This document shows, piece after piece, positions 13,213-43,300 of a stretch of 64,000 nt of DNA. Location of the stretch: NCBI GenBank assembly GCA_002269645.1, contig NIVC01003129.1, positions 1 through 64,000 of the forward strand, written 5' to 3'. This DNA comes from Macrostomum lignano (lineage: Eukaryota). The translations under genes and the position numbers were made by a program. Below the pieces are notes generated by a model. It was given only the letters and a program-made list of their open reading frames with translations. It was not told the origin of the DNA and searched no databases. Every line of letters starts with the position of its first letter. The first letter of the stretch is position 1.

Positions 13213-13331
13213 CAGACACAGACAGACAGACAGACAGACACAGACAGACAGACAGACAGACACAGACAGACAGACAGACAGACAGACACAGACAGACAGA
13301 CAGACACAGACAGACAGACAGACAGACAGAC

Positions 13332-13382
<51 letters not shown>

Positions 13383-13727
13383 GTCCCACATTCCCCCACC
13401 CGTCTTCAGTTCGGGCCCTGGCAGGAGGACCGCGATCGCCTCCTGAAGCTGGCGGAGATCTGTGCTGAATTCGAGCGCACGGGCTATTGGCGCGGAGAGC
13501 CGAGCATCGAGCGGCGCGGTAACGCCTTCTTCGCGGTGCACCACCTGCCCGACGCCGAGGACGAGGTTGACGACGCTGCCGCTGGCGATGCTGAGCAGGC
13601 CGAGGCCCGGGAGGACGCCACCGAGCGGAATGGCCACGGGAAAGACGTGGAGGAGGCGGTTGAGGCTGTGGAGGCGGCCAAGCCCTCAGACGTGGCTGCT
13701 GCTGGAGACCGAGATTCCAATGAGTGA
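12651..13727 (+). CDS. DUSP22: Atypical dual-specificity phosphatase, DUSP22/DUSP15-like; exons 12651-13121, 13410-13727
   Basis: N-terminus [15 protein letters not shown] (Gly2, myristoylation-like) and catalytic HCMAGVSRS. The GT-AG intron 13122-13409 joins LLEK|FGPWQEDRD. Confidence 0.9.
13158..13383. repeat. (CAGA)n microsatellite in DUSP intron
   Basis: Direct inspection. Confidence 0.97.
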
Positions 13728-22008: not shown

Positions 22009-25000
22009 ATGGAAAACTATCGGCACCTGAAGAACCTGGACCAGGGCACCGCTGGCCGGGTGGCTCTGTACCTGAGGCGCCAGGCAAACTGTTCAACTCC
22101 TGAAAAGGTTCGTCCGTGTGTCCATGCAGCTCGCGTGTGTCTATGGAGTGATTTTTGAGACTGGCTGGCGGACAGACAACAAATTAAGGGCTGTCAGTGG
22201 CCTGTAGTGGTGACCTTCACAGCTGACCATCATTAATGAGACATCACTGCGGTCTCGAGTATGTTGAGGAATCCTGATACTGTAGTCTCAGGTGTGACAG
22301 TCCTTACAATCCTAGGTGTGACAGTCCTTACAATCCCAGGTGTGACAGTCCTTACAATCTCAGGTGTGACAGTCCTTACAATCCTAGGTGTGACAGTCCT
22401 TACAATCCCAGGTGTGACAGTCCTTACAATCTCAGGTGTGACAGTCCTTACAATCCTAGGTGTGACAGTCCTTACAATCTCAGGTGTGACAGTCCTTACA
22501 ATCCTAGGTGTGACAGTCCTTACAATCTCAGGTGTGACAGTCCTTACAATCTCAGGCGTGACAGTCCTTACAATCCTAGGTGTGACAGTCCTTACAATCC
22601 TAGGTGTGACAGTCCTTACAATCTCAGGTGTGACAGTCCTTACAATCTCAGGCGTGACAGTCCTTACAATCCTAGGTGTGACAGTCCTTACAATCTCAGG
22701 CGTGACAGTCCTTACAATCTCAGGTGTGACAGTCCTTACAATCTCAGGCGTGACAGTCCTTACAATCCTAGGTGTGACAGTCCTTACAATCCTAGGTGTG
22801 ACAGTCCTTACAATCTCAGGTGTGACAGTCCTTACAATCCTAGGTGTGACAGTCCTTACAATCCCATGTGTGACAGTCCTTACAATCTCAGGCGTGACAG
22901 TCCTTACAATCCAGGTGTGACAGTCCTTACAATCTCCGGTGTGACAGTCCTTACAATCCTAGGTGTGACAGTCCTTACAATCTCAGGTGTGACAGTCCTT
23001 ACAATCTCAGGTGTGACAGTCCTTACAATCTCAGGTGTGACAGTCCTTACAATCTCAGGTGTGACAGTCCTTACAATCTCAGGCGTGACAGTCCTTACAA
23101 TCTCAGGCGTGACAGTCCTTACAATCTCATGCGTGACAGTCCTTACAATCTCAGGTGTGACAGTCCTTACAATCTCAGGCGTGACAGTCCTTTCTCAGGT
23201 GTGACAATTTTACCTTCCGATGGTCTCAGGTGTGACAATTTTACCTTCCGATGGTCTCAGGTGTGACAATTTTACCTTCCGATGGTCTCAGGTGTGACAA
23301 TTTTACCTTCCGATGGTCTCAGGTGTGACAAGTTTTACCTTCCGATGGTCTCAGGTGTGACAAGTTTTACCTTCCGATGGTCTCAGGTGTGACAAGTCTA
23401 CCTGTAAACCCGTTCCTCCGCCGCGTCAGTCAGTAGTGACTTTCGCAAATTCAATCACTAAGAGCAATACATGGCGGTTCATATTCGGAGACGATAGTTC
23501 ACTAGCAAAGAAGTCCAACCTCCTTGTCCTCGCTGGACCTCGCCAGGTGGTGATCAAGCGAGTCGATCTGGGCGGCGCGGACCAGCTGCAGCGCGAGGCC
23601 TTCCTGAAGGAGGCCGAGATCCTGGCCGGCCTGCGGCACCCTAACATCGTCCGGCTGCTGGACAGCTTCTTGGACGAGTCCGCCGGCGGCAGGCAGCTCT
23701 GCCTGGTGATGGAGTACGCCTCAGGCGGCTCGCTCAGCAGCCTGCTTCATCAGCAGTCCGGCCTCGGCCTGTCCGAGTCTGCCGTGGCCAGATTCGCCTG
23801 CCAGCTGCTGCTGGCCCTGGAGGAGCTGCACAGCCGCCAGGTGCTGCACCGCGACCTCAAGCCGGACAACATCCTACTGGCCAGCACCGCCCGCGATGTC
23901 TGCAAGCTGGCAGACTTCGGGCTCGCTGCGCTGCGTCAGACCAGCCCTGCTAAAGGCGAGCCTGCGTCTGAGTTGTGGCGTTGGGGTTGGAATCGCCCTA
24001 TCCTATCCCCAAATCGCATGAGAATCGCCTCCAACCCTCCTGAAAATCGCCCCCAACCCTCCTGAGAACCGCCCCCAACCCTCCTGAGAATCGCCCCCAA
24101 CCCTCCTGAGAATCGCCCCCAACCCTCCTGAGAATCGCCCCCAACCCTCCTGAGAATCGCCCCCAACCCTCCTGAGAATCGCCCCCAACCCTCCTGAGAA
24201 TCGCCTCCAACCCTCCTGAGAACCGCCCCCAACCCCCACCGCCAATCCCGCAGACAGCCCTGCAGGCAGCTCCGCCAGCGGGCTGGTCGGCACTCCCGCC
24301 TACCTCAGCCCGGAGGTGTTCAGCTCGGACAAGCTGGCCACAGCTGGCCGGGAGCCCAGCGACATCTGGGCGCTCGGCTGCTGCCTGTACGAAATGTGCT
24401 GCCTGCGCAGGCCATTCGATGCGGACACCCTGCTGCTCCTGGTGGCCCAGATTGCCGCTGGCAGCTGGGCGCCCCTCGACCCGCGCAGGTGCGGCGCTGC
24501 TGGCTTGATGCGCTCTCGGGCTATGGGGTTCACAGATACCACAGCGCCATGTCGCACCTTACTAGTCACAATAGTTAGTGTCACACTAGTCAGAACTGGC
24601 ACAGTGTCACACTAGTCACAATAGTTAGTGCCACACTAGTCAGAACTGGCACAGTGTCACACTAGTCACAACTGGCACAGTGTCACACTAGTCAGAACTG
24701 GCACAGTGTCACACTAGTCAGAACTGGCACAGTGTCACACTAGTCAGAACTGGCACAGTGTCACACTAGTCACAATAGTTAGTGCCACACTAGTCAGAAC
24801 TGGCACAGTGTCACACTAGTCACAATAGTTAGTGCCACACTAGTCAGAACTGGCACAGTGTCACACTAGTCACAATAGTTAGTGCCACACTAGTCAGAAC
24901 TGGCACAGTGTCACACTAGTCAGAACTGGCACAGTGTCACACTAGTCAGAACTGGCACAGTGTCACACTAGTCAGAACTGGCACAGTGTCACACTAGTCA

Positions 25001-28000
25001 GAACTGGCACAGTGTCACACTAGTCAGAACTGGCACAGTGTCACACTAGTCAGAACTGGCACAGTGTCACACTAGTCACAACTGGCACAGTGTCACACTA
25101 GTCACAACTGGCACAGTGTCACACTAGTCACAACTGGCACAGTGTCACACTAGTCACAACTGGCACAGTGTCACACTAGTCACAACTGGCACAGTGTCAC
25201 ACTAGTCACAACTGGCACAGTGTCACACTAGTCACAACTGGCACAGTGTCACACTAATTAGAAATTCACGTGTAGTTCTGTTTTCAATTCTCTCAGATAT
25301 TCACCACTGATGTCGGACCTCATCGCCAAGATGCTGAAGGTGGACCCGCTCGAGCGGCCCTCGGCGGCGCAGCTGCTGTCGCACCCGCTCATCCTGAGCC
25401 ACCTGTTCCCGTTGCTCACCGACCTCGGCTGCGTTGGCTTGAAAAAGCAGCGCACCAAGAAGTCCAGCAGGGCCAAGCTGGCCACCACGGTGAAGCGACT
25501 GCGGTGCCGGGTGAGGCCTGGTCGGGCATTTAAGATTTGTGGCGCTTTGCGCTATTTTTGGTTATTCGTTTAATAAATTGTGTATAAAGACTAGCCTGAT
25601 TTTGCAAGGTAGCATGCGGCGTAGCAGACGCTAATAACGCTTAGGGCAAAACTCAAACCCATGAGGCCCAACCCCCAAGGCACAGGGAGTGTGCAGACCT
25701 TACGATTAGAAATTATGGGCCGCTGTGTGAGCGCGTGTACATGTGCGTACCTGCGTACAGTATTGGCGCGCTTGCATGTAGCCACACAGCTGCAATAAAA
25801 CAACACACAACAACACACAATACCACACCAACACAATACCACACCAACACCATAACACAACAACACAATACCACACCAACACAACACCACAACAACGCAC
25901 AATACCACAACACAATACCACACCAACACAATACCACAACAACGCACAATACCACAACAACACAATACCACACCAACACAATACCACAACAACGCACAAT
26001 ACCACAACAACACAATACCACAACAACACAATACCACAACAACACAATACCACAACAACGCACAATACCACAACACAATACCACACCAACACAATACCAC
26101 ACCAACACCATAACACAACAACACAATACCACACCAACACAACACCACAACAACGCACAATACCACAACACAATACCACACCAACACAATACCACAACAA
26201 CGCACAATACCACAACAACACAATACCACACCAACACAATACCACAACAACGCACAATACCACAACAACACAATACCACAACAACACAATACCACAACAA
26301 CACAATACCACAACAACGCACAATACCACAACACAATACCACAACAACGCACAATACCACAACACAATGCCACACCAACACAATACCACAACAACACAAT
26401 ACCACAACAACACAATACCACAACAACGCACAATACCACAACACAATACCACACCAACACAATACCACAACAACGCACAATACCACAACACAATGTCACA
26501 CCAACACAATACCACAACAACACAATACCACAACAACACAATACCAAACCAACACAATAACACACCAGCACAATACCACGAAGTAAGACCTCGCCGCCGA
26601 CTGAATCCGGGGTGCCAACGTCAGCCAGCAGGCAGTCGCCGAGTGCGCGCCTGTTGCCGCCAGTAGGGTGCCTGCAGCAGCACCTCCTGCACCTGCCTCT
26701 GCTGTGAGCAGTGCGTCTCGGCGCTAATGATGTGACCTCACACCTGGTTAATTTCAGTAGTAACCGATGCGCATATCTGCTTCCCCCCCCCCCCAGGAGA
26801 GCGGCAACAGGTCTTTGTACCTGTTCACCGCCGGGCCGGACCAAGACTCCCACCGGTTGTCGGAGATCGCCTACGATCTGCCGCACGAGGATCTGCGATG
26901 CGCGAAACTCTTCAGCGGCGACTGCCTGATCGGCCTGACCAAGCGCGACCGGCTGGTGCGCTGGGACCGGCCTGGCGGGGAGCTTGGCCAGCCTCCCTGC
27001 AGCTGGTTTATGTCGGACATTGTCGGCCTGGATAATTTCAGGGTTGTCCAGCTGGACTGCGGGGACCGCTTCGCTGCCTGCCTGACCGATGCAGGCGTTG
27101 TGCTCACCTTCGGCTGCGGCAGGGATGGCGCTCTGGGTGAGCAGCTCTGGGCTGACCCAGTGCGGGACTCTGGGCTGACCCAGTGCGGGACTCTGGGCTG
27201 ACCCAGTGCGGTACTCTGGGCTGACCCAGTGCGGGACTCTGGGCTGACCCAGTGCGGGACTCTGGGCTGACCCAGTGCGGGACTCTGGGCTGACCCAGTG
27301 CTGGACTCTGGGCTGACCCAGTGCGGGACTCTGGGCTGACCCAGTGCTGGACTCTGGGCTGACCCAGTGCGGGACTCTGGGCTGACCCAGTGCGGGACTC
27401 TGAGCTGACCCAGTGCGGGACTCCAGGTTCCTGGCGATCCTGAGATCCTGAAGATCCTAGTTTTTTCAGACAAGCAGATTTGAAACCCCAACCTCTCTCT
27501 CAGGCCACGGCGACGTCGCCGACCTCGAGCGACCCCGCGTTGTCGGCTCGCTCGCGCAGATCTCGGTGACTTCAGTCGCCTGCGGCCGCCGTTTCGCCGC
27601 CTGCGTCGCCTCCTCCGGTGAGGTGTTCGCCTGGGGCTGCCTGCCCGCAGCCGAGGCTGGCGCCGAAGTGTCGGCAACGTTCCCGACGCTGCTGCCGATG
27701 CCGTCTGGCCGGTGCCGAGCCCTGTCCGTCTTCGCCGGGCCTGAGGCGCTGCTGGTCGCGGCCGAGACCGAGGGCTTGCAGGCCGCTCTGCTGGGGACCG
27801 GCTGGAACCGGTTCGGCCGCCTGGGCCTACCGGAGTCCGCCAGGCCGCTGCTGCCGCAGCTGGAGCTCCTGCCGGTGCCGCTCGAGCAGCCGGAGGAGTC
27901 GGTGGCCGCGGCCTCCATCGCTGGCAATCGCTGCCTGCTGCTGCTGACCAGCGGCCGCCTCCTGGCTGCCGGCCGCGGCTGCGCTGCCGGCTTCGGTCCG

Positions 28001-28267
28001 CTGCGGCTGCCGAATTCCTCGCTGGCAGTCGGCGGCGTCTGCGCTGGCAGCGGCTGGGCGCTGGTGGCGACGAAGGCCGAGGCGGCAGACGATGATGGCG
28101 GTCGGTACGGCGAGCTGCTGACGCTGCTGCTGGAGGAGGCCGGTGGCGGCGACGGGGAGCTGCGGCCGCTGCTGGCCAACTGCCGGGTGCGCAGCCTCGC
28201 CGCTGATGCCGCCGGGGCTCGGGCGGCGATTCTGTGCCGCCGCTGCAGGGACGCCGGAGGCGACTGA
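22009..28267 (+). CDS. NEK8: NIMA-related kinase with RCC1 repeats; exons 22009-22107, 23547-23955, 24254-24488, 25297-25510, 26797-27136, 27504-28267
   Basis: VVIK, HRDLKPDNILL, KLADFG, LVGTPAYLSPE, SDIWALGC.LYEM and LFPLLTDLGCV, then RCC1 repeats (VLTFGCGRDGALG|HGD, VACGRRF...VFAWG). Phases are consistent if intron 2 is GC-AG. Confidence 0.88.
22288..23400. repeat. 24-bp then ~31-bp minisatellites in NEK8 intron 1
   Basis: CAGGTGTGACAGTCCTTACAATCT, switching near 23196 to CAGGTGTGACAATTTTACCTTCCGATGGTCT. Confidence 0.95.
24030..24235. repeat. 22-bp minisatellite in NEK8 intron 2
   Basis: CCCTCCTGAGAATCGCCCCCAA. Confidence 0.95.
24590..25257. repeat. 26-bp minisatellite in NEK8 intron 3
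   Basis: CTAGTCAGAACTGGCACAGTGTCACA. Confidence 0.95.
25800..26578. repeat. CA-rich ~13-bp compound repeat in NEK8 intron 4
   Basis: CAACACAATACCA variants. Confidence 0.95.
27145..27421. repeat. 23-bp minisatellite in NEK8 intron 5
   Basis: CTCTGGGCTGACCCAGTGCGGGA. Confidence 0.95.
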
Positions 28268-28303
28268 AGCTGCGGAAAGGCAGCAAAAAATCCTATACGT
28301 ACC

Positions 28304-28840
28304 CTCTCCCTCTCTCCCTCTTCTCTCCCTCTCCCTCCCCCTCTCCTCTCTCCCTCTCCTCTCCCTCTCCCTCCCCCTCTCCTCTCTCCCTCTCCTCTCT
28401 CCCTCTCCTCTCCCTCTCCCTCTCCTCTCTCCCTCTCTCTCTCCCTCTCCTCTCTCCCTCTCCTCTCTTCCTCTCCTCTCCCTCTCCTCTCTCCCTCTCC
28501 CTCTCTCCATCTCTCTCCCTCTCCTCTCCCTCTCCTTCTCCCTCTCCTCTCCCTCTCCCTCCCCCTCTCCTCTCTCCCTCTCTCTCCCTCTCTCTCTCCC
28601 TCTCCTCTCTCCCTCTCTCTCCCTCTCCTCTCCCTCTCTCTCCCTCCCTCTCCCCCTCTCCTCTCTCCCTCTCTCTCCCTCTCTCTCCCTCTCCTCTCTC
28701 CCTCTCTCTCCCTCTCCTCTCCCTCTCTCTCCCTCCTCTCTCCCTCTCCCTCTCTCCATCTCTCTCCCTCTCCTCTCTCCGTCTCCTCTCTCCCTTTCCT
28801 CGCTCCCTCTTCTCTCCATCTCTCTCCCTCTCTACCTCCT
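28304..28840. repeat. CT-rich polypyrimidine tract downstream of NEK8
   Basis: Direct inspection. Confidence 0.95.
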
Positions 28841-29517
28841 TTCTCCGCACCAGCTCCCATCTCGCCTCAAATAATCTGTATTTGGACTTTTTATACTCTA
28901 TGCGCTCCCAATAGGCATTTTCTGTATAAAGCAAACATTTTATAAACATATTGAAACTTGGTCCAGAATCTCTTTTGACTTTCCAACTGACTTGTGTAGC
29001 TGGTTGATTAGAGCAATTATCTTCGTTGCTTTTTGGCATCTTATTTAATTGAAGTTGCATATAAATGAGAGCTAGAGGGGTTTGATGGTGAACTCTGCAC
29101 AGATTTGCACTAACTTGCACCCGCCCTGCACCGCTGTGCTCGCTGGGCGAAATCTTTTGTTTTGAGATGCGGTATCCATGACACTCCAGAGGTGTGAAGG
29201 CTACTGCTGTGAGGGCGAGGAGGGTGGGGGCTGCCCCGTGAGACCCGGCGGCGAGGAGAGCGCCAGAGCTGCGCTGGACAGGCGCAACGCAGCTTTTATT
29301 GAGCAGAGTTTCTGAGAATTCTCTATCCAACCCTCCATGAGAAAGGAATGAAATTTAATTTTGAGCGAAGGCTGCCTGCCTTGGACAGCTAGACGCGAGA
29401 AGGCTTACTGGGGCCCTGAGGCCAGGGAGTTCTTAGTTTTTTGTTTTTTTAGTCTGTGTGTGACTACCTAGATAGATAGTCACACACAAACAAACCTTTT
29501 TTAGTATATGGATCTTT

Positions 29518-29800
29518 CGCATCTCCGACACCTCATATCTCCGACACTCCATATCTCCGACACCTCATATCTCCGACACTCCATATCTCCGACAGCTCAT
29601 ATCTCCGACATCTCATATCCCCAACACCTCATATCTCCGACACCTCATATTTCCGACACTTCATATTTCCGACACTTCATATCTCCGACACCTCATATTT
29701 CCGACACTTCATATCTCCGACACCTCGTATCTCCGACACTTCCTATCCCCGACACTCTCCGTTAGGCTTAGGCTTAGGGTTAAGTCGGAGATATGACAGC
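29518..29800. repeat. 16-bp minisatellite within a small TIR-type element carrying TTAGG(G) repeats
   Basis: ATCTCCGACACCTCAT units, ending GTTAGGCTTAGGCTTAGGGTTAAGTCGGAGATATG (inverted copy of the unit). Confidence 0.8.
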
Positions 29801-30076
29801 ACCCCTCCACTCCAGATGTCTGGATTGAGTTGTCCTTGCTCAGAGCGAAGGAGGCCGGCCAACCCCTCATCTTCTCAAAGTCTAAAAATGCAATAAATTT
29901 TTTTCTAAAACTTGTTTAAGCATCAAGCGGCCTCTTTTGCCCCCGCTATGCGAAGAGAAGGCAGAAAGACAAATTTCATGGCAGCTGCCAGCGGTGCATT
30001 GTTCTGCCGGGCTCAGAGCTCTACTTAAGCTGGGCACTCGCCAGTTAGCTTGTCCCCATTCGGCAGATGCTTCATC

Positions 30077-31429
30077 ATGATTCGCACTACGGCAGGCAGC
30101 AATCTCGGAGGCAAAGGCGCTGGGTAAGGAATTGATCGGACTCGATGTACTTTTAATTGCTACACGTACTGACCAAAGTTTCGGCAAAACTTCCGTTGAG
30201 TGGATTATTCTCCGAATTTTTTTCTATGGCAAACCGTTGAGTGGATTTGTCTCCGAATTTTTGTCTATGGCAAACCGTTGAGTGGATTTGTCTCCGAATT
30301 TTTGTCTATGGCAAACCGTTGAGTGGATTTGTCTCCGAATTTTTGTCTATGGCAAACCGTTGAGTGGATTTGTCTCCGAATTTTTGTCTATGGCAAACCG
30401 TTGAGTGGATTTGTCTCCGAATTTTTGTCTATGGCAAACCGTTGAGTGGATTTGTCTCCGAATTTTTGTCTATGGCAAACCGTTGAGTGGATTTGTCTCC
30501 GAATTTTTGTCTATGGCAAACCGCATTCAACGCTGTACAAAACATCAAATCTTGCTAAACTGTCTGGATGAAATATCTTTTACCCCGCACTGCACAGCTT
30601 CGATGCCGCCCCCCTGGCGCTGTGGACAACCCGGCAGCCCGGCGGAACCGGCCAGCAGCCGGCCCTCAACAGCAACTTCATCAGCAGCCGCAGCGGCCCG
30701 GCAGCGGCCAGCGGCCAGTTCCACCTGCCATTTCCAATGGCCGGTCGCCTACCGCACCGGCACAGACGCGGCGGCGGCCCGCCCGCTGGCAGGACGGTCG
30801 GAGAGCGGCAAGTCGAAGTGCTGACTCGGTTGCCCAGCCTGTACAGCAAGATCCACAGCAATGTGCTGCAGCAGCAGCAGCAACAGCAAAAGCAGCAACC
30901 CGAGCCGCTGCCTTTGCTTCACGGCAGCAAGCGGATGAAGAAGCAGATCCAGCAGCAGCAGCAACAGCAAAAGCAGAAAACTCCCACTGCACTGGACGCT
31001 GAGCCTGGCACTGCTGAGCCCGCATCCGAACCGTCAGACGCTCCGAGGTCCCGGTTTCGAATCTCAGTTGCTGACCAAGTGCCGCAGGAGCAGCGGTCCG
31101 TCGAGTCGCAGAAGCAGCAAAAGCAAAAGCAAAAGCAGCAGCAGCAGCAGCCCAGAAGCGTTCCCATGGCCTACTTCAGCCGCGGCTCCGCCAGCCTACA
31201 CTCGACCTGCTGCGACGACGTCGACACTCGCAGCTGCGACCGGCGCCACCCGGACCAGACGGTGGCCTACAGCCGGGCCGCGGTGTACATTCGCGACAAC
31301 GAGCTGATGCCTGCCGCCAAGGCCCGCCTTATCTGGCGCTGGATGGACGAGCTGGAGCACGCGACACCCTCGGCCAGCCGCCTATTCGTGTACGACCCCG
31401 GCAGCCGCTGGTTCAGCATGGCCGCCTAG
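30077..31429 (+). CDS. Hypothetical polyQ-containing protein; exons 30077-30123, 30598-31429
   Basis: Phase-2 GT-AG intron (GG|GTAAGG ... CACAG|C), GC-rich coding bias, two polyQ runs and an ordered-looking C-terminus. No family recognised. Confidence 0.65.
30190..30525. repeat. 41-bp minisatellite in the intron of the polyQ gene
   Basis: GGCAAACCGTTGAGTGGATTTGTCTCCGAATTTTTGTCTAT. Confidence 0.95.
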
Positions 31430-31502
31430 GGGCGCTTCGGCCCCCGTCAGGGCTGCTTTGCCTCCGTTTGTTAAACTGATTGCTCAGCTGGGGCTTCGGA
31501 AT

Positions 31503-31504
<2 letters not shown>

Positions 31505-31533
<29 letters not shown>

Positions 31534-31555
31534 GTCTGTCTGTCTGTCTGTCTGC

Positions 31556-31599
<44 letters not shown>

Positions 31600-31624
31600 G
31601 TCTGTCTGTCTGTCTGTCTGTCTG

Positions 31625-31675
<51 letters not shown>

Positions 31676-31736
31676 GTGTGTGACTCTGTCTGCCTGCCTG
31701 CCTGCCTGCCTGCCTGTCTGTCTGTCTGTCTGTCTA

Positions 31737-31797
<61 letters not shown>

Positions 31798-31806
31798 GTC
31801 TGTCTG

Positions 31807-31843
<37 letters not shown>

Positions 31844-31846
31844 TAG

Positions 31847-31893
<47 letters not shown>

Positions 31894-31906
31894 ATGTCTG
31901 TCTTAG

Positions 31907-31937
<31 letters not shown>

Positions 31938-31956
31938 GTGTGTGTGAGTCTGTCTA

Positions 31957-31991
<35 letters not shown>

Positions 31992-32080
31992 GTCTGTCTG
32001 TCTGTCTGTCTGTCTGTGTGTGTGTGTCTGTCTGCCTGCCTGTCTGCCTGCCTGTCTGTCTGTCTGTCTGCCTGCCTGCC
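31505..32080. repeat. (TCTG)n microsatellite
   Basis: Direct inspection. Confidence 0.97.
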
Positions 32081-32517
32081 TATACAGCCACTGGAGGCCA
32101 TTCAGTTAAGCCCCTCCCTTCTCAGTGCATTTCGCATCTGCAGCATTGAAAATGACTGCTAAATATACAATGTTGCTGTTCTGCTTGACCGTCTGTTAGA
32201 TTTTTGTTACCTGCTGAAAGGACCGCTTGCCAAGTAAAATAAATATTCGAGCTAGAATGTCCTCAGAGCGGACTGCAGCAGTTTTTGCTGGGCACAGAGT
32301 GACAGCGGGGTAAATTGATAGTAGTATAAAAGGCAAAGTGAATTTTCGCTTTGAATTTTTAATTCTCGATGCCCAATTAACATTCTGCATTCTGTATTTA
32401 CCGCCAGCGCAAGTAATGCATTTTATCTAGAAGCATTTGAAGATGTGTAGCGATCAGCTAATTTTATCCAGCAAGTCCAGGTCGGGCCAGGAGACACAGG
32501 CGACCCGGTGGCCTCAG

Positions 32518-33342
32518 TCAGCCTTGCTGGCCGGGTGCGTCTCGCCTTTTGTCACCGTCTTCGTTCAGGGTCCGGCGCAGAAATGCGAACAGCGGTGTGT
32601 AAACTCGCTTGACGGCTGCCCTGTCTGGGAGGGCATTGCGGGTATCATTGTTAGACACAGGTATCATTGTTGGACACAGTATCATTGTTGGACACGGGTA
32701 TCATTGTTGGACACAGGCATCATTGTTGGATACTGGCATCATTGTTGGACACAGGTATCATTGTTAGACACAGGCATCATTGTTGGACACAGGTATCATT
32801 GTTAGAAACGGGCATCATTACTGCTGTTATAGACACTGGCATCATTGTTAGACACTGGCATCATTACTGCTGTTAGACACTGGCATCATTGTTAGACACT
32901 GGCATCATTACTGCTGTTAGACACTGGCATCATTGTTAGACACTGGCATCATTACTGCTGTTAGACGCTGGCATCATTGTTAGACACTGGCATCATTACT
33001 GCTGTTAGACACTGGCATCATTACTGCTGTTAGACACTGGCATCATTACTGCTGTTAAACACTGGCATCATTGTTAGACACTGGCATCATTACTGCTGTT
33101 AAACACTGGCATCATTACTGCTGTTAGACACTGGCATCATTACTGCTGTTAAACACTGGCATCATTACTGCTGTTAAACACTATCATCCTGCAATACCTT
33201 CAGCAGCGGCGGGTGGCTCCATGGCGTCCTGCATGCCGCTGAGGGGGCGGTCCTCGTGCACCTCAGCGACAGTGTGTCGGTCGTCGCCAACCATGCTGCT
33301 GACCAGGAGCACCGCGGCAGTCAGTGCGAAACAGCTCGGCAT
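32518..33342 (-). CDS. Candidate neuropeptide precursor (83 aa); exons 33342-33198, 32624-32518
   Basis: MPSCFALTAAVLLVSSMVG (signal-like)-DDRHTVAEVHEDRPLSGMQDAMEPPAAAE|DRAAV-KR-VYTPLFAFL-RR-TLNEDGD-KR-RDAPGQQG*. The phase-1 GT-AG intron is consistent. Confidence 0.75.
32640..33185. repeat. 19/25-bp minisatellite in the precursor intron
   Basis: GACACTGGCATCATT(ACTGCT)GTTA. Confidence 0.93.
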
Positions 33343-33959
33343 CTTGGGACTGATCAGTGATGGGGCAGCCGGTGGGTTCGAATCGGTCTTGCGGTGAGTC
33401 TGCGCTGCTCACCTGCTCGGCTTGGCCTTAAATTCTTCATCTCAAAGAAAGGGATTAAACCGCGCTTCGCCGCAGTCTAAGTGGCTCAGACTGAGGAACC
33501 GAAATTCCCGAAGGAGCTGCCGCTGTCCGGGGGTGTCCGCGCTGCCCGGCCATCCTTGCCTCGGGTTTCCATGAAATGTTTTTGACGAGATTTTTTTTCA
33601 ACTTGTAAATAACATTTTCTAAAAACATCAATTTGAAGGATTTTAGCGGCTTCTAACGGGGAGGCCGGCTGATGGATCCTGTTTCACTGCCGCGCCGAAA
33701 TCTTAAGCCCCATGCTTTGTTCGAGCAGTTTCAGAGTGTTGCCAGGCCGTTTGGGTAATTTCTTTGCCCAGGTGGCGAAGTAAAAACATTTGCTGCTCAA
33801 GAAAGACGGACAGACAGTAACTTCGTTTTCTGGGAGCTAATTCTTTCTCGCGCAGAGATCCGAACCCATCATGTTTTGGTAGCGCCAGGGAATCGAACTC
33901 ACGTTACCGCTGCATCCTAATTAATAATAATTAATACTATATATATAGCATATAGTAGA

Positions 33960-34990
33960 GGCTAGCAGGGAAAGCCGTGGAATTTCCATGGAGCCTACTG
34001 AGAGTGCATAGATTGTGTTTACAGGTGGTGGGACTGCCGTAGGTGAATCCGCCGGAATTCCATATGGGTCGCAATGAACTTGACTTACTTGACTCTACGC
34101 GAGCAGGTGGTTGTGCACTCAAAGGCATGGGTCGCTGCTTAACTCTCTGAGTAAAGGGTAATCTCCACAGAATGTTCTGGGGGTAATTTCCTTCACCCAG
34201 GCGCACTGATTGTACAGCTCCATGGCGCAGAAGCTGATGGCCGTGCGGCCGGAGGTTCCGCTTTCTAAATGCTTCTGGATGGGGACACCGCGTCGAGCAG
34301 ACGGCGGGTAGTCTTCGTTGCCTCTCCTCTGACAAAGAGGTCAAGGGGGGGGGAATGTTTAGGAAGGAGTTCATGCCAGCAAAGGGCGTAGAGGGAGTCG
34401 CGCTCATGATAGCTTGAAAAGCGCGGCCTTGCACCCTGTTAAGAGCTTCAAGGACCCCTTTCACCTCTAGGGCATTGTTCCAAATGAAGCCGGCGAAGGA
34501 GATGGCCGGTCTCACGATGGCAGTGTAAATCCACCAGAGGCGGGGGTGGAGGCCCCACGTAGTGCCGAAAGTTCTGCGGATCTGCGAGAGCTTTGCAGGC
34601 TTTGGTTTGAACCTGTGGTCGAGGGTGACGCCCAGAAATCTGGTTTGTCTCTCCATGGCAACGGGTTTGCCATAGAGGGAGAGCGGTTCAATCCTCCAGT
34701 TACGGCGGCTGGTGAACATGATGGCCATGGTTTTAGACTCAGAGAACCTGAGACCGCAGCTATGTGCCCAGCGCTCGGCACGGTGGATGAAGGCTTGAAG
34801 GAGGTCTCTTAGGACCGCGGGTGTTGGTCCGGCCACAGTGGCGGTAACATCGTCGGCATAGCCGATTTTCTGAACCAGATCCGAGTAACGTCTGCACTCG
34901 TCCATGACCAAGTTCCAGAGAATCGGGCTGAGGACTTCACCTTTCTGGACCTCCACAGAGCGGGAGTGCCAGCAGGCAGTTGACGAAACT
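33960..34990 (-). mobile_element. Degenerate, internally deleted non-LTR retrotransposon (same family as 45656-49131)
   Basis: QKGEVLSPILWNLVMDE..KIGYADDVTA..LRDLLQAFIHRAERWA...TWGLHPRLWWIYTAIVRP aligns with the intact copy. Confidence 0.9.
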
Positions 34991-35842
34991 CCGATTGCAC
35001 ACCTGTTAGCAGCAGCAGCAACTCCTGCACTGGCGCTGACAGGCGCGGATGATGCAGCCTGCCAGCTGGAGTCGCCTACGACGCAGCGAGTCGCTTGTCT
35101 CATGGCCCGGGCCCCCGCTCGTAAGTCATTGTGTTATTCTGCTCTCTCTGGGGCCCAGGGCCCATTGGAGCCCTGCGCGCCGCGTCAACCTGCTCAGTGT
35201 AAGACATCCCATGAAACAGCATCTTAGGATGTCTTACACTGAGTAGTATTGAGTCGTCCCTGGGTCGCCGCAATCCCGGTTGCACTGCGACTCCGGAGCC
35301 TCACTGTACGTCCTTAGAGGTTGCCACAATGGCGGCCGATGCCAGCCTGCAGTCCCGTATAGGGAAAGCTGGCATTTGAGCACACGGCCAAGCACAGCTG
35401 CCAGATCATGCTGCTAGACACGTAGATCCATCCTGTCCCATCTTTGCTGTAGTCGCCAAGATGACGAGTGATCTTTAAAATTTCTACGTCTGGTTAGTCC
35501 GAGAAGCGAGCGTGAAGTCCAGTTTTTAGTTCGGTTAGAGTAGCACTTGGGTTCACATGGATCGCCTCCTCCAGAAAATCCAGCATCTCTTGATCCACGC
35601 TCACGTGCTTACGACCTGACCTCCCTTTGGCATCCTTGCAGACCTTCCCTCTTCACACTCGTGTATTCATTCGGTAGTTCGTTTGATTCCCATAGCACGA
35701 GCGAGGTTTACGTACAAAGCCGTTTTCATGTGTATATCAGATGTAAGTTCTGTGGTGTGTACGAGCATATACGAGTATGAGCCTTTTTCGATCATTATCG
35801 CTCATTCGTGCAGTCGGCATTCTCAAAGAAATAGCAGCTTGT

Positions 35843-35892
35843 GGTTAGGGTTAGTGTTAGGGTTAGGGCTAGGGTTAGGGTTAGAGTTAGGC
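35843..35892 (+). repeat. Short interstitial TTAGGG-like run
   Basis: GGTTAGGGTTAGTGTTAGGGTTAGGGCTAGGGTTAGGGTTAGAGTTAGG. Confidence 0.85.
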
Positions 35893-36797
35893 TTACTAAC
35901 AGCACTGTATATTATAGACGTAGGCACAAATGCTCACAATCATAGCATTGTTAAGGGACCTCCGCTTGGCACCTCCGCGAGGCAGAGGCTCTATACGACC
36001 GGTTGCGTTGAATTGTCAAACTATGTAAGTCACGGTTCTTCGTGAGATGCCCAACAGCCTATCGAAATCTTGCCAGTCCTCTCCATCCTGATAGGCTTGA
36101 ATCCTGTTATAAGGTCCACGCTGGGCCATTCTTTGATCTTGCTATGTATGTCTGTGGTGTTTTCTTTGCTATGGGCAAACTAGGTCGCAGTTTTGGCAAA
36201 ATTGATTGCAGTTTTGGCAAACTAGATCGCAAAAAGGTATAATATCCAGAGAAAGAATTTCGATCAATTGCACTTGTCGGAATTGATTGGACTCATGGTT
36301 TTATTCATCCATGATTGGACTTCTTGCAGTCTCGGCCATAGACAGAATAACAGGAATAGTCTTTTTAAAGCCCACTGCTTGAAATTGAATGCAACTGTCG
36401 CTTTCTTGTGGAAGTTTTTGTTGTATTTAAAAAGAGTCTCTTTTGAAAGCTTGGCATGGTTGTCGGAATTGAATGCACACCCTACCGACCGCTGCTATAA
36501 ACCTAACTCAGGCTCGTTACCGCTGCAACTTAAAACACACGCAAAGGCTACAGGCCTCGGAAGTGGTTTTAATTCAAAACTTGTACATACTGTATGTTTC
36601 CTCTGAAGGTGCACAACAATATTATGAGGTTCTCGCATTGACACGGCAACGAAATAGGCATGTAAATCAATTACTTGCTAGAATTGGGCTTACAAAGAAA
36701 ATTATTGTAAAATCATTCTAACTTCAGTTTCATGCACGAGTTGGACTGCAGTTTCCGACAGTCGAAAATCGAAAGCGCTGAATTTGAAGCAACAAGT

Positions 36798-39700
36798 TCA
36801 GGTATAGAAAATTGGGCCGCAGCCTCCTAGCTTCACCATCGCTGAGTCTGCAGGACAGCTGAAGGCTGACTGGAACTCAGGGATCAGCGACAGCACTCCG
36901 TTGACGCTGCAATTGAGCAGTGTTCATTAAACAATGCGAAGGTTAAAATTTGAAAAAATCAGCTTGAGTCATCGGCTTACTGAATATCCTCTGGCATGAG
37001 GCGGCCCAAGGCTCCCCGGATGTATGAGTACAGCGGATCCCGGGTGAAGCAGAATGTCTGCAATTTCAGTTCAGGCTTATGATACAGGTTCAAGTCCACA
37101 GTAAAGTTGTAACCCTCTCTTTACCTGTGCCCTTTCTTCACCTGTTCCCTCTCTTCACCTGTGCCCTCTCTTCACCTGTGCCCTCTCTTCACCTGTGCCC
37201 TCTCTTCACCTGTGCCCTCTCCACACCCGCCATTTCGGTACCCGTTTTTGACCCTCGGCCTCACCTGTGCCCAGGCAGTGAACAAAGACTGCATTTTGTT
37301 GAGATGGCCAAGCGGCAGCGGGAGCTCCGACCCACCCCCCTCGAAACCGGCGTAAGCCTTCGACACCAGCCGGAGCGCATCCGTCTCAGCAACTGCCGTG
37401 CGCAGAGTTCTCGAGATTATCGGGCTGATGTCCACCTGAGTGCGGGATGGTAATTATCACTTAATCAGTATGGGATTTCACACCGCTTGCCCCAGCTTGA
37501 TCACTCAGCCAGCAGCCCTGCCCCACAGAATCCCTCAGCATGTGCCCTCAGCCACCAGCCCTGCCCCACAGAATCACTCAGCCAGCAGCCCTGCCCCACA
37601 GAATCCCTCAGCCACCAGCCCTGCCCCACAGAATCCCTCAGCCAGCAGCCCTGCCCCACAGAATCCCTCAGCCACCAGCCCTGCCCCACAGAATCCCTCA
37701 GCCACCAGCCCTGCCCCACAGAATCCCTCAGCCACCAGCCCTGCCCCACAGAATCCCTCAGCCAGCAGCCCTGCCCCACAGAATCCCTCAGCCAGCAGCC
37801 CTGCCCCACAGAATCCCTCAGCCAGCAGCCCTGCCCCACAGAATCACCCTCAGCCACCAGCCCTGCCCCACAGAATCTCTCAGCCACCAGCCCTGCCCCA
37901 CAAAATCACTCAGCCAGCAGCCCTGCCCCACAGAATCACCCTCAGCCACCAGCCCTGCCCCACAGAATCCCTCAGCCACCAGCCCTGCCCCACAGAATCC
38001 CTCAGCCAGCAGCCCTGCCCCACAGAATCCCTCAGCCAGCAGCCCTGCCCCACAGAATCCCTCAGCCAGCAGCCCTGCCCCACAGAATCACCCTCAGCCA
38101 GCAGCCCTGCCCCACAAAATCCCTCAGCCACCAGCCCTGCCCCACAGAATCCCTCAGCCAGCAGCCCTGCCCCACAGAATCCCTCAGCCAGCAGCCCTGC
38201 CCCACAGAATCCCTCAGCCAGCAGCCCTGCCCCACAGAATCACCCTCAGCCACCAGCCCTGCCCCACAAAATCCCTCAGCCACCAGCCCTGCCCCACAGA
38301 ATCCCTCAGCCACCAGCCCTGCCCCACAAAATCCCTCAGCCACCAGCCCTGCCCCACAAAATCCTTCAGCCACCAGCCCTGCCCCACAAAATCCCTCAGC
38401 CAGCAGCCCTGCCCCACAGAATCCCTCAGCCAGCAGCCCTGCCCCACAAAATCACTCACATAGTAACTTCTGTTTCCAACCCAATACGGCCCTGCCGTCA
38501 AGTCCCAGTAGGTGAAGTTGACGCACTGCGCCTTCGCCAAATAGCTCTGCCTTGTCCGCTCCGACCACATGGGATTTGAGTTGCCCTGCTGGTCCGTGAG
38601 CTGGCCTTGAAAGAAGAGGTTGGGATTCGAATTTGTCAGAAAATCCCCTGTTCAATCGGCCGGTACCTAACTGGACTAAAATATAATCTCACAAGCACAA
38701 GGTGAATTTTAGGCCAATAGAATGCTCAATAGGAGTCCAATTAGAATCCCACTGGAGTCCAATTAGAATCCCACTGGAGTCCAATTAGAATCCCACTGGA
38801 GTCCAATTAGAATCCCACTGGAGCCCAATTAGAATCCCACTGGAGCCCAATTAGAATCCCACTGGAGTCCCATTAGAATCCCACTGGAGTCCAATTAGAA
38901 TCCCACTGGAGTCCAATTAGAATCCCACTGGAGTCCAATTAGAATCCCACTGGAGTCCAATTAGAATCCCACTGGAGCCCAATTAGAATCCCACTGGAGC
39001 CCAATTAGAATCCCACTGGAGTCCCATTAGAATCCCACTGGAGTCCAATTAGAATCCCACTGGAGTCCCATCGGAATCCCACTGGAGTCCCATCGGAATC
39101 CCACTGGAGTCCCATCGGAATCCCACTGGAGTCCCATCGGAATCCCACTGGAGTCCCATCGGAATCCCACTGGAGTCCCATCGGAATCCCACTGGAGTCC
39201 CATCGGAATCCCACTGGAGTCCCATCCGAATCCCATGTCCAGCAGCCGCAGCAGCTGCAGCAGCTCTGCAGTCACCAGTGGCATCCACAGCCTTGATCAG
39301 CTCAGCCGCCATGCGCTGCCCGATGGTGGCGAAATTGATGTAGCCCGGCAGCTGAGGGGAGAAGAACGGCCACTGCAGAATGCCGGCAGGAACTGTCAGC
39401 TGCGCTGTGGAAGTCATGGACAGCGCCACGTCGAAGGTGGCGCCGCTCCAAGCGGTGGCCTGTGGCACGGTGCCCAGCAGGGAGCCCTGCTTCAGGCGCT
39501 TGAAGTTCTGCCAGCTGATTGAGATGTCCATCATGGGGTAATCCGGGTCAACAGTGAGCTGTCGCGGCCGGGGTGCGTGAAAGTGCGAGAGTTTAGAGCT
39601 GACACACTCTAATCTAGAGTGACACATTTTAATCTGGAGTGACACATTCTAATCTAGAGTGACACATTCTAATCTGGAGAGACACATTCTAATCTAGAGT

Positions 39701-40343
39701 GACACATTTTAATCTAGATTGACACATTCTAATCTAGAGTGACACACTCTAATCTAGAGTGACACATTCTAATCTAGAGTGACACATTTTAATCTGGAGT
39801 GACACATTCTAATCTAGAGTGACACATTCTAATCTGGAGAGACACATTCTAATCTAGAGTGACACATTCTAATCTAGAGTGACACATTTTAATCTAGATT
39901 GACACACTCTAATCTAGAGTGACACATTCTAATCTAGAGTGACACATTCTAATCTAGAGTGACACATTCCAATCTGAAGTGACACACTAATCTAAGAGTA
40001 CTAAATCAAACATTCAGCATCATAATTTACGCTCACATCCTTGTAGTACTCGTCAAGAAACTCATCCCGGATCTCAGTCGGTGAGTAGCCGATCTTGTCC
40101 ACCACAGCCTGGATTTTCATCCTCATCTTGGCTCGTTCGGTGGACTCAATCCAGTCGAGCTTTTCAATGCCGCTGACGAACTCAGACTGGAGAGTTTTGT
40201 ACAGACTGTCCACCTGCGAAAGGGTTTTGTTAGAGTCAGCACTCGGAATGACTGCTTGGAGGCTGCTGGCCCCGAGGCTCATGGGCAAATCTGATTTCAC
40301 ATTCTAGAGGAAGAGAGATGAAAAGAGGGAGAGAGGCGAAGAG

Positions 40344-40397
<54 letters not shown>

Positions 40398-43300
40398 GGA
40401 GAGGGAGAGAGACGGAGAGGGAGAGAGATGAAGAGAAAAGGAGAGAGGCGGAGAGACGGAGAGGGAGAGAGAGGGAGAGAGGCGGAGAGGGAGAGAGATG
40501 AAGAGAAAAGGAGAGGGAGAGAGAGGGAGAGAGATGGAGAGAGATGGAGAGGGAGAGAGAGGGAGAGAGATGGAGAGGGAAAGAGAGGGAGAGAGGCGGA
40601 GAGGGAGAGAGAGGGAGAGAGAGGGAGAGAGAGGGAGAGAGATGGAGAGGGAGAGAGGCGGAGAGACGAAGAGGCAGAGAGAGGGAGAGAGGGGAGCAGG
40701 GCAGAGGTCAACTGCCAAATCGGAGGTGCTCCTTAGGCCCGAGCTCAACCGGGTACAAGTGCAGCCGGTGCAGGATTCATATCCGATATTTATCGCAATA
40801 AGAAATTTACTCTTACGCATGAAACATTTGACAAAACCGAAGTTTGCTAAATTATAACCAGTTTCGTACTAATTGGAGCTCATTACTTCCCATCAGAGGG
40901 AAAGGGGAGATATACCGGTCGAAGAATTATAATCAGAGATCAGAGAGAGCCTGGGGCGAGCTGTACAGAACAAACACAAGTCCCGACCCACAGCCTGCTT
41001 GCTGGAGTCCACCAGGTGGTCCGCAACGAAGAGACTGTTGAGCCCCAGCAACATGAAGGTCTTGGTGCGGTCCAAGCAGTAGTCCAGCCTGCTCTGGTAG
41101 ATGTAGCTGCTGCTGGACAGGCTGGACTCAAACTCGCGCTTGGCGTGAACGTAGGCGCTCGACAGGTCACCGCTGTAATTGCGGATCACCTGCCAATTCA
41201 GGTAGTTGGACAGCCTCCTGTGCGGGGGAGCATGGGTGTGGCATTAGCTGACGGTGACAGGTAAATCCTGTGTCTGTAGCGGGTAAATACTGTGTCTGTA
41301 GCGGGTAAATCCTGCGTCTGTAGCGGGTAAATACTGTGTCTGTAGCGGGTAAATCCTGTGTCTGTAGCGGGTAAATCCTGTGTCTGTAGCGGGTAAATCC
41401 TGTGTCTGTAGCGGGTAAATCCTGTGTCTGTAGCGGGTAAATCCTGTGTCTGTAGCGGGTAAATCCTGTGTCTGTAGCGGGTAAATCCTGTGTCTGTAGC
41501 GGGTAAATCCTGTGTCTGTAGCGGGTAAATCCTGTGTCTGTAGCGGGTAAATCCTGTGTCTGTAGCGGGTAAATAAGTTTATAGCTCATAAAACGTGACT
41601 CCTGCCTCTAACAAGAGGGACTCCCTGTCTGGCAATGAGAACTCGGTCTCAACGGGAATCCACCTGCCTGTTATAATCGACTGGGTGCAGCAACCTGATG
41701 GTCTCCCCAACGTAGGTCATCGCCCGCGTCAGGTAGTCAGCCGTCTGCACTGCCACCCTGGTGGAGCCCTGCACCCCGGACTCGAGGGTGCCGCTGAACA
41801 GCGCAGACCACCTGATTGGCTGGTAGCTCGAGTCCATCTCAGTCAGGCTGATTTGGTTGCCAGGGGCCAGCGGCGGCTTGTCGGGGTCCGGTCCAACGGC
41901 GTTCCTGCTGAACTGTTGGTATTGACAGTGGGACGGTGCTTTGGTAATTGGGAGAATTCTCCCCAACCATATTTCCCTGCTAGGTGAATTCTTCCACAGA
42001 GCTCACATTGGCGAGGGCCGTCTCGATCTCCATGACGTCGAGCACGAAGTTCTCGATGCGCGCCGTGACGCCGTTCGGATTATCGACCGTGCCGGGCTCG
42101 GCGTCGGCAACCAGGAGTTTCGCTGTTGCTCTCATGTACTCCTTGTAGGACTCGCGCTGCCTGTGATACTGGAAATAAAGTACTCTCTGACCCCGTGTAC
42201 TCTCTGACCCTGTGTACTCTCTGACCCTGTGTACTCTCTGACCCTGTGTACTCTCTGACCCTGTGTACTCTCTGACCCTGTGTACTCTCTGACCCTGTGT
42301 ACTCTCTGACCCTGTGTACTCTCTGACCCTGTGTACTCTCTGACCCTGTGTACTCTCTGACCCTGTGTACTCTCTGACCCTGTGTACTCTCTGACCCTGT
42401 GTACTCTCTGACCCCGTGTACTCTCTTACATCCCAAGTGATCTCTGCCCCACATGTACAGCCATTTCCCTGTGTCCTTTCTTCAGTCGCGCACCAGTGCA
42501 CAGACAGCTGCATCCAGTACTCACAAAGTCGAACAGGTACATGGCAGGTAGCATGCCGATCCCGCCGTTGTAAATCTGGAAATAAGGGCGAAATAAGCTG
42601 ACTTGCCGCACTCAGAGCAGAGCACCTGAGCTTCAGGACCTGAGCTTCAGGACAGGCAACACCCTCACCGAAATCGTGTACCGGCCTCCGTCAAGCGGGT
42701 TCGGCTCCACCCGGTACTCGAAGAAGGCCGAAGCTCCGTAGGTTTTCACGGCGGAGAGCAGCTCGCGGTCCAGGTCGAACTGGCCGACCACCGAGCCGTT
42801 GATCACGTAGAACTGACGCCGCAGCAGGTCGGCGAACAGGGCGCCGCGCACCCGTTCGATTCGAAAGTCGTCAATGCAGGTGCCGAAAATTGTTTTCAAC
42901 TTTCGTTCGTATGAGTCCGCCGAGTTGCGAACGATCGGCGAACGGAGGGCGGCCTCGAGCTTGTCGGCGTTCTGCCTGATCAGCTCGCCGCTGACCGTCC
43001 GCTCGCGGTAAGCCGGGTTTATCGGCATCACCTGCTCGGCAGCGCCGCAGGCGAAAGCGTAGAAATTATCGCATGGGCTGGCCGAGCGGTTGAGGAAACT
43101 CACCTGGGGAGAAATGGTGGCTTGAAGTTTAGAAGTACAGGGAAACTGCGAGCTGTGATTCCAACCGAGGGAATCGGTGGGGAATCGGTGGAGAATCGGT
43201 GGGGAATCGGTGGGGAATCGGTGGGGAATCGGTGGGTAATCGGTGGGGAATCGGTGGGGAATCGGTGGGTAATCGGTGGGGAATCGGTGGGTAATCGGTG

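What the first reader, a model, noticed from the sequence alone, without database searches (positions are those of the whole stretch)
32518..33342. Candidate new neuropeptide: KR-VYTPLFAFL-RR
Seen: this two-exon gene is not in the supplied ORF track. It has a signal-like N-terminus, an acidic spacer, and dibasic sites flanking VYTPLFAFL and TLNEDGD, with no Gly for amidation. Established: prohormone convertases cut at KR/RR. Inference: a single-copy non-amidated peptide that I cannot match to a known family.
Basis: partly seen in the sequence, partly recalled or inferred. Interest (0 to 1): 0.7.

Follow-up and report, generated by a model that had tools for sequence, protein, structure and literature searches.

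The report
Unverified orphan secreted-peptide gene, Macrostomum
The two-exon reading frame is really there in this Macrostomum lignano flatworm sequence and looks more like a real small secreted-peptide gene than like chance, but nothing available here shows that it is transcribed, conserved in other species or made in neurons, so "new neuropeptide" remains only a candidate.

Summary
The window is Macrostomum lignano DNA. On the minus strand, ATG 33342 to 33198, a 573-nt GT..AG intron made almost wholly of a minisatellite, and 32624 to 32518 join in frame. The product is 83 aa: hydrophobic signal-like start, acidic spacer, KR-VYTPLFAFL-RR-TLNEDGD-KRR-DAPGQQG.

The bare pattern is not above chance: 8 such loci occur in the reversed window and 3-4 per simulated window. 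The candidate adds coding-like composition: best of six frames in both exons, and a score reached by 0 of 162 chance loci. It also has GC peaks on both exons, A at -3, a CTAAC branch site and a lone ATTAAA 155 nt past the stop.

It is low-copy. The only matches among 1.84 billion proteins are two chimeric M. lignano gene models from duplicated copies of this locus; one uses the same junction. There is no match to any family, paper or planarian prohormone.

Transcription and orthology could not be tested. Absence from the protein collections means little, because control genes from the window are absent too.

Verdict: a real orphan secreted-precursor gene about 0.5, a neuropeptide about 0.2, chance about 0.35.

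The parts
33198..33342 (-). Exon 1: ATG at 33342, 48 codons plus the first base of codon 49. It encodes the signal-like segment and the acidic spacer.
   Evidence: It is a local GC peak, 0.63-0.69. The codon score of 0.28 bits/codon is the best of six frames and in the top 2.2% of open non-genic frames. 47 of 48 residues are identical in two duplicated copies.
33295..33342 (-). Signal-like N-terminus MPSCFALTAAVLLVSS (residues 1-16). Signal-peptidase cleavage is predicted after S15 or S16.
   Evidence: Hydropathy core of 2.73, and the (-3,-1) rule is met. This is a heuristic only: no SignalP was run. The n-region has no basic residue.
32625..33197 (-). Putative intron, 573 nt: GTATTG...CTAAC(N25)CAG.
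   Evidence: The donor lacks the usual G at +5. Branch-like CTAAC lies about 26 nt before the acceptor, followed by a pyrimidine run, CCCTCCCAG.
32644..33182 (.). Minisatellite with 19/25/44-bp units that fills the putative intron.
   Evidence: Tandem Repeats Finder. It contains stop codons in the gene's frame, so the ORF is continuous only if this stretch is spliced out.
32518..32624 (-). Exon 2: the last two bases of codon 49, codons 50-83 and TGA.
   Evidence: GC peak of 0.58-0.65. The codon score of 0.09 is the best of six frames and in the top 11.5% of the null. Residues 49-72 are identical in A0A1I8IUA3.
32578..32604 (-). Predicted peptide VYTPLFAFL, flanked by KR (32605..32610) and RR (32572..32577).
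   Evidence: Monoisotopic [M+H]+ is 1070.592. That it is cleaved out is inferred, not shown.
32551..32571 (-). Predicted peptide TLNEDGD, between RR and KRR (32542..32550).
32521..32541 (-). C-terminal DAPGQQG. The terminal Gly could donate an amide, giving DAPGQQ-NH2.
32358..32363 (-). ATTAAA, a candidate poly(A) signal 155 nt after the stop.
   Evidence: it is the only AWTAAA on the minus strand between 30152 and 36300. The role is inferred.
33343..33640 (-). Putative 5' UTR (GC 0.53-0.64) below an A/T-rich stretch at about 33550..33640 (GC 0.33) that could hold the promoter. There is an A at -3 of the ATG.
   Evidence: This is inference only.

Best explanation
This is a genuine but so far unverified two-exon gene of Macrostomum lignano, known only from that species. 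It lies in the 4.5-kb gap between the 3' end of an M13 peptidase gene and the 3' end of a convergent NEK-kinase/RCC1 gene.

Proposed mechanism, every step inferred:
1. An mRNA of roughly 0.6 kb is made. Transcription starts below the A/T-rich stretch near 33600, the minisatellite intron is spliced out, and polyadenylation follows ATTAAA at 32363.
2. The mRNA encodes an 83-aa pre-propeptide.
3. The N-terminal 15-16 residues direct it into the secretory pathway and are removed.
4. If it enters the regulated pathway, prohormone convertase and carboxypeptidase cut at KR, RR and KRR. This releases an acidic spacer peptide, VYTPLFAFL, TLNEDGD and DAPGQQ(-amide).

What is shown is the sequence anatomy, the coding-like composition, the low copy number and the conservation in duplicated copies. 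Whether the product signals in the nervous system is a further, weaker inference, at about 0.2 overall.
For: - The frame is kept across a GT..AG intron with a CTAAC branch site and a pyrimidine tract.
- The annotated frame has the best codon score of six frames in both exons. GC1/GC2/GC3 are 0.73/0.48/0.72 against 0.63/0.49/0.73 in the window's confident genes.
- None of 162 chance pattern matches in 40 simulated windows, and none of 8 in the reversed window, reaches its codon score. The only other locus in the real window that does lies in a true coding exon.
- Exons that the same UniProt models placed on the antisense of a real gene score 0.01 or less.
- Both exons are GC peaks between AT-richer flanks.
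- There is an A at -3, and a lone ATTAAA 155 nt after the stop. It faces an AATAAA of the convergent plus-strand gene at 32238.
- The sequence is low-copy, not a dispersed repeat. There are two hits among 1.84 billion representatives, both from collinear copies of this locus.
- There is no similarity to the neighbouring LINE below 34091.
- Exon 1 differs at 1 of 48 residues from the more diverged copy. The non-coding translations around it are about 89% identical, giving p of about 0.03, tested post hoc.
- It meets the sequence criteria used for planarian prohormone genes: a signal sequence, basic sites flanking peptides, and under 200 aa (PMC2953531).
Against: - There is no evidence of transcription, splicing or translation.
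- There is no homologue outside M. lignano.
- The donor GTATTG lacks G at +5.
- The signal-like n-region has no basic residue, and no trained signal-peptide predictor was run.
- The synonymous-codon signal alone is weak: 0.069 bits/codon, and 16% of null frames do as well.
- The codon model was trained on only about 2,000 codons. True coding chunks scored leave-one-out overlap the null.
- My 'strict' null criteria were shaped after seeing the candidate.
- In the more diverged duplicate, the gene model skips exon 2.
- The peptide is single-copy and not amidated, which is atypical for well-studied flatworm neuropeptides.
Confidence: 0.5

Rival explanations
1. There is no gene. Two short open frames in GC-rich islands of repeat-rich intergenic DNA happen to be joinable by one of many GT..AG pairs, and the pattern was picked by eye, and by an ab initio predictor, from a very large search space.
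For: - The same pattern occurs 8 times in the reversed window and 3-4 times per simulated window. That implies on the order of 10^4 to 10^5 chance matches in the 764-Mb genome (PMC5730564).
- Two of the three 'strict' hits in the real window are demonstrably not prohormones. They are EMC4 and NEK exons.
- The UniProt models that contain the junction are plainly wrong elsewhere.
- There is no homologue, and no expression evidence.
- The synonymous-codon signal is weak.
Against: - Chance matches do not reach the candidate's codon score: 0 of 162 and 0 of 8.
- The frame is the best of six in both exons independently.
- The GC peaks coincide with the exons.
- ATTAAA, A at -3 and the branch site are all in place.
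- Exon 1 is better conserved between duplicates than the neighbouring junk.
Confidence: 0.35
2. The sequence is coding-like because it is a remnant or a part of something else. It could be a decaying duplicate of a once-functional gene, an exon pair of an unrecognised longer or alternative transcript, or a transcribed but untranslated RNA. In that case the 83-aa product is not made or not functional.
For: - M. lignano underwent a recent whole-genome duplication and carries 180 Mb of duplicated blocks at 95% identity or more, so redundant copies are free to decay (PMC5730564, PMC10468722).
- The window's copy differs from both other copies at residue 30, E against K.
- The gene model for the diverged copy does not use exon 2.
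- There is an alternative donor inside exon 2, used in A0A1I8IUA3.
Against: - The ORF in the window is intact from the ATG to the stop.
- No longer gene can be built. Downstream 'exons' are antisense to a real gene and score as non-coding. Upstream lies a dead LINE, then the stop of the M13 peptidase gene.
- No protein anywhere resembles it, so no parent gene is known.
Confidence: 0.15

Closest known systems
Flatworm peptide prohormone genes (npp/spp/ppp genes of Schmidtea mediterranea; Collins et al. 2010, PMC2953531)
   Same: - A small precursor of under 200 aa.
- An N-terminal signal-like sequence.
- Short peptides bracketed by KR/RR/KRR, with an acidic spacer.
- Orphan, lineage-restricted sequence is common in that set.
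   Different: - There is no sequence similarity to any of the 51 planarian prohormones. No shared 3-5-mer motif was found in their sequence tables.
- The peptide is single-copy.
- The main peptide has no amidation Gly.
- Those genes were all verified by cDNA and mostly by mass spectrometry. This one has neither.
Amidated flatworm neuropeptides (FMRFamide-like peptides, NPF/NPY family)
   Same: The general precursor logic: a signal peptide followed by dibasic cleavage.
   Different: - There is no RFamide or RYamide C-terminus.
- There is no Gly-dibasic amidation signal after VYTPLFAFL or TLNEDGD. Only the terminal DAPGQQG could be amidated.
- There is no Pfam hit.
Ab initio false-positive exons in the M. 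lignano ML2-derived UniProt proteome (A0A1I8IUA3, A0A1I8IWM6)
   Same: The candidate's exons appear in these models, and one model uses the identical junction.
   Different: The clearly spurious exons of those models are antisense to a real gene and score as non-coding, at 0.01 bits/codon or less. The candidate's exons score like coding sequence.

Membership tests
Flatworm prohormone gene, by the criteria of Collins et al. 2010 (PMC2953531) | The gene prediction is verified by cDNA. | not testable with these tools
   No M. lignano transcript or read data can be reached. Exact look-ups for the spliced product fail, but they fail for control genes too.
Flatworm prohormone gene, by the criteria of Collins et al. 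2010 (PMC2953531) | Possesses a signal sequence. | tested here: inconclusive
   The hydrophobic core (mean KD 2.73 over 10 uncharged residues) and the (-3,-1) rule are satisfied after S15 or S16. However, 4% of chance ATG ORFs pass the same core test, and no trained predictor was available.
Flatworm prohormone gene, by the criteria of Collins et al. 2010 (PMC2953531) | Basic cleavage sites flank predicted or MS-confirmed peptides. | tested here: met
   KR, RR and KRR bracket VYTPLFAFL and TLNEDGD. Cleavage itself was not shown.
Flatworm prohormone gene, by the criteria of Collins et al. 2010 (PMC2953531) | Shorter than 200 aa, and not similar to genes annotated as something else. | tested here: met
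   The product is 83 aa. It has no Pfam family. Its only protein matches are two chimeric M. lignano models.
Neuropeptide in the functional sense | Expression in neurons or neurosecretory cells, and release of the processed peptide. | not testable with these tools
   This needs in situ hybridisation, single-cell data and peptidomics.
Conserved neuropeptide family | Orthologues in related species that conserve the peptide and its cleavage sites. | tested here: inconclusive
   There are no hits outside M. lignano. Coverage of Macrostomum in the collections is evidently poor: EMC4, DSP and iGluR from the same window have no exact or close entry.
Dispersed repeat or LINE-derived sequence | Many copies, or similarity to the neighbouring LINE. 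| tested here: not met
   There is no second copy in the window. Only two collinear copies exist in the protein library. LINE similarity stops at 34091.

The most novel reading that the evidence does not exclude
The locus encodes a previously undescribed, Macrostomum-restricted family of non-amidated hydrophobic signalling peptide (VYTPLFAFL), plus a small amidated C-terminal peptide (DAPGQQ-NH2). It would be expressed in neurons or neurosecretory cells, and would have been missed by annotation because its intron is a minisatellite and its exons were swallowed into chimeric gene models.
Probability: 0.15. Interest if true: 0.5.

Novelty: new member of a known kind. Interest (0 to 1): 0.3.

Why it matters
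If real, it adds one orphan secreted-peptide or prohormone gene to a regeneration and reproduction model organism whose peptide signalling is poorly catalogued. It would also show that such genes hide in repeat-rich gaps and inside chimeric gene models.

That is useful for annotation and for peptidomics search databases. It would not change how prohormones are thought to work.

If it is not real, it is a worked example of how easily 'signal peptide + dibasic sites + GT..AG' arises by chance, at about 8 loci per 64 kb here. It also shows that such candidates need composition, copy-number and transcript checks.

Tried and rejected
- **Word-indexed protein search with the 83-aa product:** nothing at E of 10 or less. 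This search even missed the two M. lignano models later found by full HMMER, so its negative result carries little weight.
- **iGluR ORF search to identify the organism:** nothing at 1e-20. It was a wasted search, but it serves as a coverage control.
- **Exact look-ups:** the spliced product, its K30 variant and both single-exon ORFs are absent. EMC4, DSP and other control ORFs are absent too, so the absence is uninformative.
- **JGI metagenome scan:** 386 pattern matches, none a relative.
- **'Exon 1 is the tail of the upstream LINE':** rejected. Protein and DNA similarity to LINEs stops at 34091. No similarity to the 3' region of the related Logan element L001 was found.
- **tRNA/SINE-like look of 33370..33390 and 33880..33918:** no ARAGORN or Rfam support.
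- **'3' exons of the M13 peptidase gene', as in the UniProt models:** rejected. That gene reaches its own stop near 36800, with AWTAAA hexamers at 36573 and 36305.
- **Deriving M. lignano splice-site consensus from the M13 introns:** my quick mapper was unreliable, so it was not used.
- **Paper searches for the peptide and for M. lignano neuropeptide catalogues:** nothing relevant. Koziol et al. 2016 is not in the library.

Full report
**What is there.**
The finding lies on the minus strand. Reading 33342 downward, an ATG opens a 48-codon stretch, MPSCFALTAAVLLVSSMVGDDRHTVAEVHEDRPLSGMQDAMEPPAAAE. It ends at a donor, GAAG|GTATTG, whose last exon base is 33198.

The next 573 nt (33197..32625) are almost wholly a minisatellite with 19/25/44-bp units at 32644..33182. 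This array carries stop codons in the gene's frame. After a CTAAC about 26 nt upstream and the run CCCTCCCAG, the frame resumes at 32624 in phase 1. It continues DRAAV-KR-VYTPLFAFL-RR-TLNEDGD-KRR-DAPGQQG and stops at 32520..32518.

The mechanical ORF list shows the two halves as separate ORFs of 52 and 55 aa. One detail was missed: the last residue is Gly, so a C-terminal DAPGQQ-amide is possible.

**Organism and neighbourhood.**
- The intact LINE ORF at 45671..49021 is 100% identical to part of a UniRef protein of Macrostomum lignano.
- On the minus strand an M13 peptidase gene runs from about 43886 to its own stop near 36800.
- A dead LINE fragment occupies 34968..34091.
- On the plus strand a NEK-type kinase/RCC1 gene runs from 23436 to an ORF that ends at 31429. 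It is followed by (TCTG)146 and an AATAAA at 32238.
- The candidate therefore sits alone in a 4.5-kb gap between two gene ends, tail to tail with the plus-strand gene.

**Is the pattern more than chance?**
On its own, no.
- 8 of 187 first-ATG ORFs of at least 45 aa in the window have an equally hydrophobic uncharged core.
- 2.8% of open 35-aa stretches have three dibasic runs.
- A scan for 'signal-like ATG ORF, G|GT donor, YAG acceptor within 1 kb, frame kept, at least 3 dibasic runs' finds 9 loci in the window, 8 in the reversed (uncomplemented) window and 3-4 per Markov-simulated window.
- With criteria tightened to the candidate's own splice-site quality, three loci remain. Two of them are inside EMC4 and the NEK kinase, so they are not prohormones.
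- Scaled to a 764-Mb genome (PMC5730564), chance matches outnumber any plausible set of real prohormone genes by far. A planarian has 51 of them (PMC2953531).

**What lifts this one above the chance matches.**
1. *Composition.*
   - With a codon table built from the window's confident genes, the proposed frame is the best of six in both exons, at 0.28 and 0.09 bits/codon.
   - GC by codon position is 0.73/0.48/0.72, against 0.63/0.49/0.73 in the training genes.
   - None of 162 chance loci from 40 simulated windows, and none of the 8 in the reversed window, reaches its score.
   - The only other locus in the real window that does is a true coding exon.
   - Exons that UniProt models placed on the antisense of the NEK gene score 0.01 or less, while their opposite (true) strand scores 0.09 to 0.25.
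   - Caveats: the table rests on about 2,000 codons. Leave-one-out scores of true genes overlap the null. The synonymous-only signal is weak, and 16% of null frames do as well.
2. *Gene-like layout.* Both exons are GC peaks (0.58-0.69) between an AT-richer intron and flanks. There is an A at -3 of the ATG. A single ATTAAA lies 155 nt after the stop, the only AWTAAA on that strand for 6 kb.
3. *Copy number.*
   - A full HMMER search of 1.84 billion representative proteins found only two real matches, UniProt A0A1I8IUA3 and A0A1I8IWM6. Both are M. lignano proteins, and both are collinear with the window from the M13 peptidase down past the candidate.
   - The sequence is therefore present in a few duplicated copies of one locus. 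That fits the species' recent genome duplication and its 180 Mb of near-identical blocks. It is not a dispersed repeat.
4. *Conservation.* Exon 1 differs at one residue (E30K) from both copies. The non-coding translations around it are about 89% identical in the more diverged copy, giving p of about 0.03 in a post hoc test.

**What the UniProt models do and do not show.**
Both models fuse the M13 peptidase C-terminus, LINE reverse transcriptase, the candidate and antisense junk. Their database names are unrelated to this segment. They show that a predictor found the same splice sites attractive. They do not show that an mRNA exists.

**What could not be tested.**
No M. lignano reads, transcripts or sister-species genomes are reachable with these tools. 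The candidate is absent from the word-indexed search, the exact look-ups and the metagenome scan. This is uninformative, because bona fide genes of the same window (EMC4, DSP phosphatase, iGluR, LINE) also lack exact or close entries. No paper holds the peptide, and no planarian prohormone shares even a tripeptide-level motif in a comparable context.

**Weighing.**
- A rough count gives about 0.02 chance loci per window that show both the pattern and the codon score.
- The expected number of real prohormone-like genes per window is similar, about 0.02-0.03.
- The poly(A) hexamer, the start context, the low copy number and the conservation between duplicates tilt this towards a real gene.
- The post hoc nature of my criteria, the small training set and the possibility of a decaying duplicate tilt it back.

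| Reading | Probability |
|---|---|
| Real gene for a secreted 83-aa precursor | about 0.5 |
| Chance ORF pair | about 0.35 |
| Remnant, or part of something else | about 0.15 |

Given a real secreted precursor, dibasic processing is plausible, but neuronal signalling is only one option. M. lignano also has many lineage-specific gland and reproductive secretions (my own background knowledge). 'Neuropeptide' therefore stands near 0.2.

**Comparison with known systems.**
It works like a flatworm prohormone gene. It meets the sequence criteria of Collins et al. 2010: a signal sequence (by heuristic), basic sites flanking peptides, a length under 200 aa, and no similarity to other annotated genes. 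It lacks their first criterion, cDNA verification, and has no peptide evidence. It belongs to no described peptide family. If real, it is a new member of a known kind.

Noticed in passing
window 26575..43028 (minus), versus UniProt A0A1I8IUA3 and A0A1I8IWM6: Two M. lignano UniProt gene models are chimeras. They fuse the M13 peptidase, a dead LINE, the candidate exons and stretches antisense to a NEK/RCC1 gene. Their database names do not describe the aligned parts.
   Followed up: yes
window 45671..49021 (+): An intact non-LTR retrotransposon ORF2 with endonuclease, reverse transcriptase and RNase H. It is 100% identical to part of a UniRef M. lignano 'serine/threonine kinase' model, which is another chimeric annotation.
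   Followed up: partly
window 34968..34091 (-): A dead LINE fragment directly upstream of the candidate. It is 71% identical in DNA to Logan contig L001 (run ERR14788467) and has an internal deletion of about 315 nt.
   Followed up: partly
window 31503..32078: A (TCTG)n microsatellite of 146 copies, lying between the plus-strand gene's last ORF and its likely AATAAA at 32238.
   Followed up: no
window 35843..35895: A short interstitial telomere-like array, (GGTTAG) x 8.8.
   Followed up: no
window 30193..30523: A 41-bp tandem repeat, 8 copies at 98% identity.
   Followed up: no
window 59320..59640 (-): A 106-aa ATG ORF with a signal-like N-terminus and a Cys-rich start (MLNRTYRVISVAALISLVPLACCQKKNPDC...). 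It has no Pfam hit, and in the pattern scan its best spliced form (ATG 59640) had a low codon score, -0.38.
   Followed up: partly
window 22261..22920, 25591..26886, 27466..29330: Long coding-looking ORFs that are really translated tandem repeats: GVTVLTI units, Cys/Val/Leu units, and Glu/Arg/Gly units. They inflate any ORF-based scan of this window.
   Followed up: no
window 9916..10548 (+), 12492..13727 (+), 19211..20335 (+), 61745..63334 (+): Long single ORFs with clear Pfam domains: EMC4, dual-specificity phosphatase, Nop14-like, and an ionotropic glutamate receptor N-terminal half. None has an exact entry in the protein collection.
   Followed up: partly
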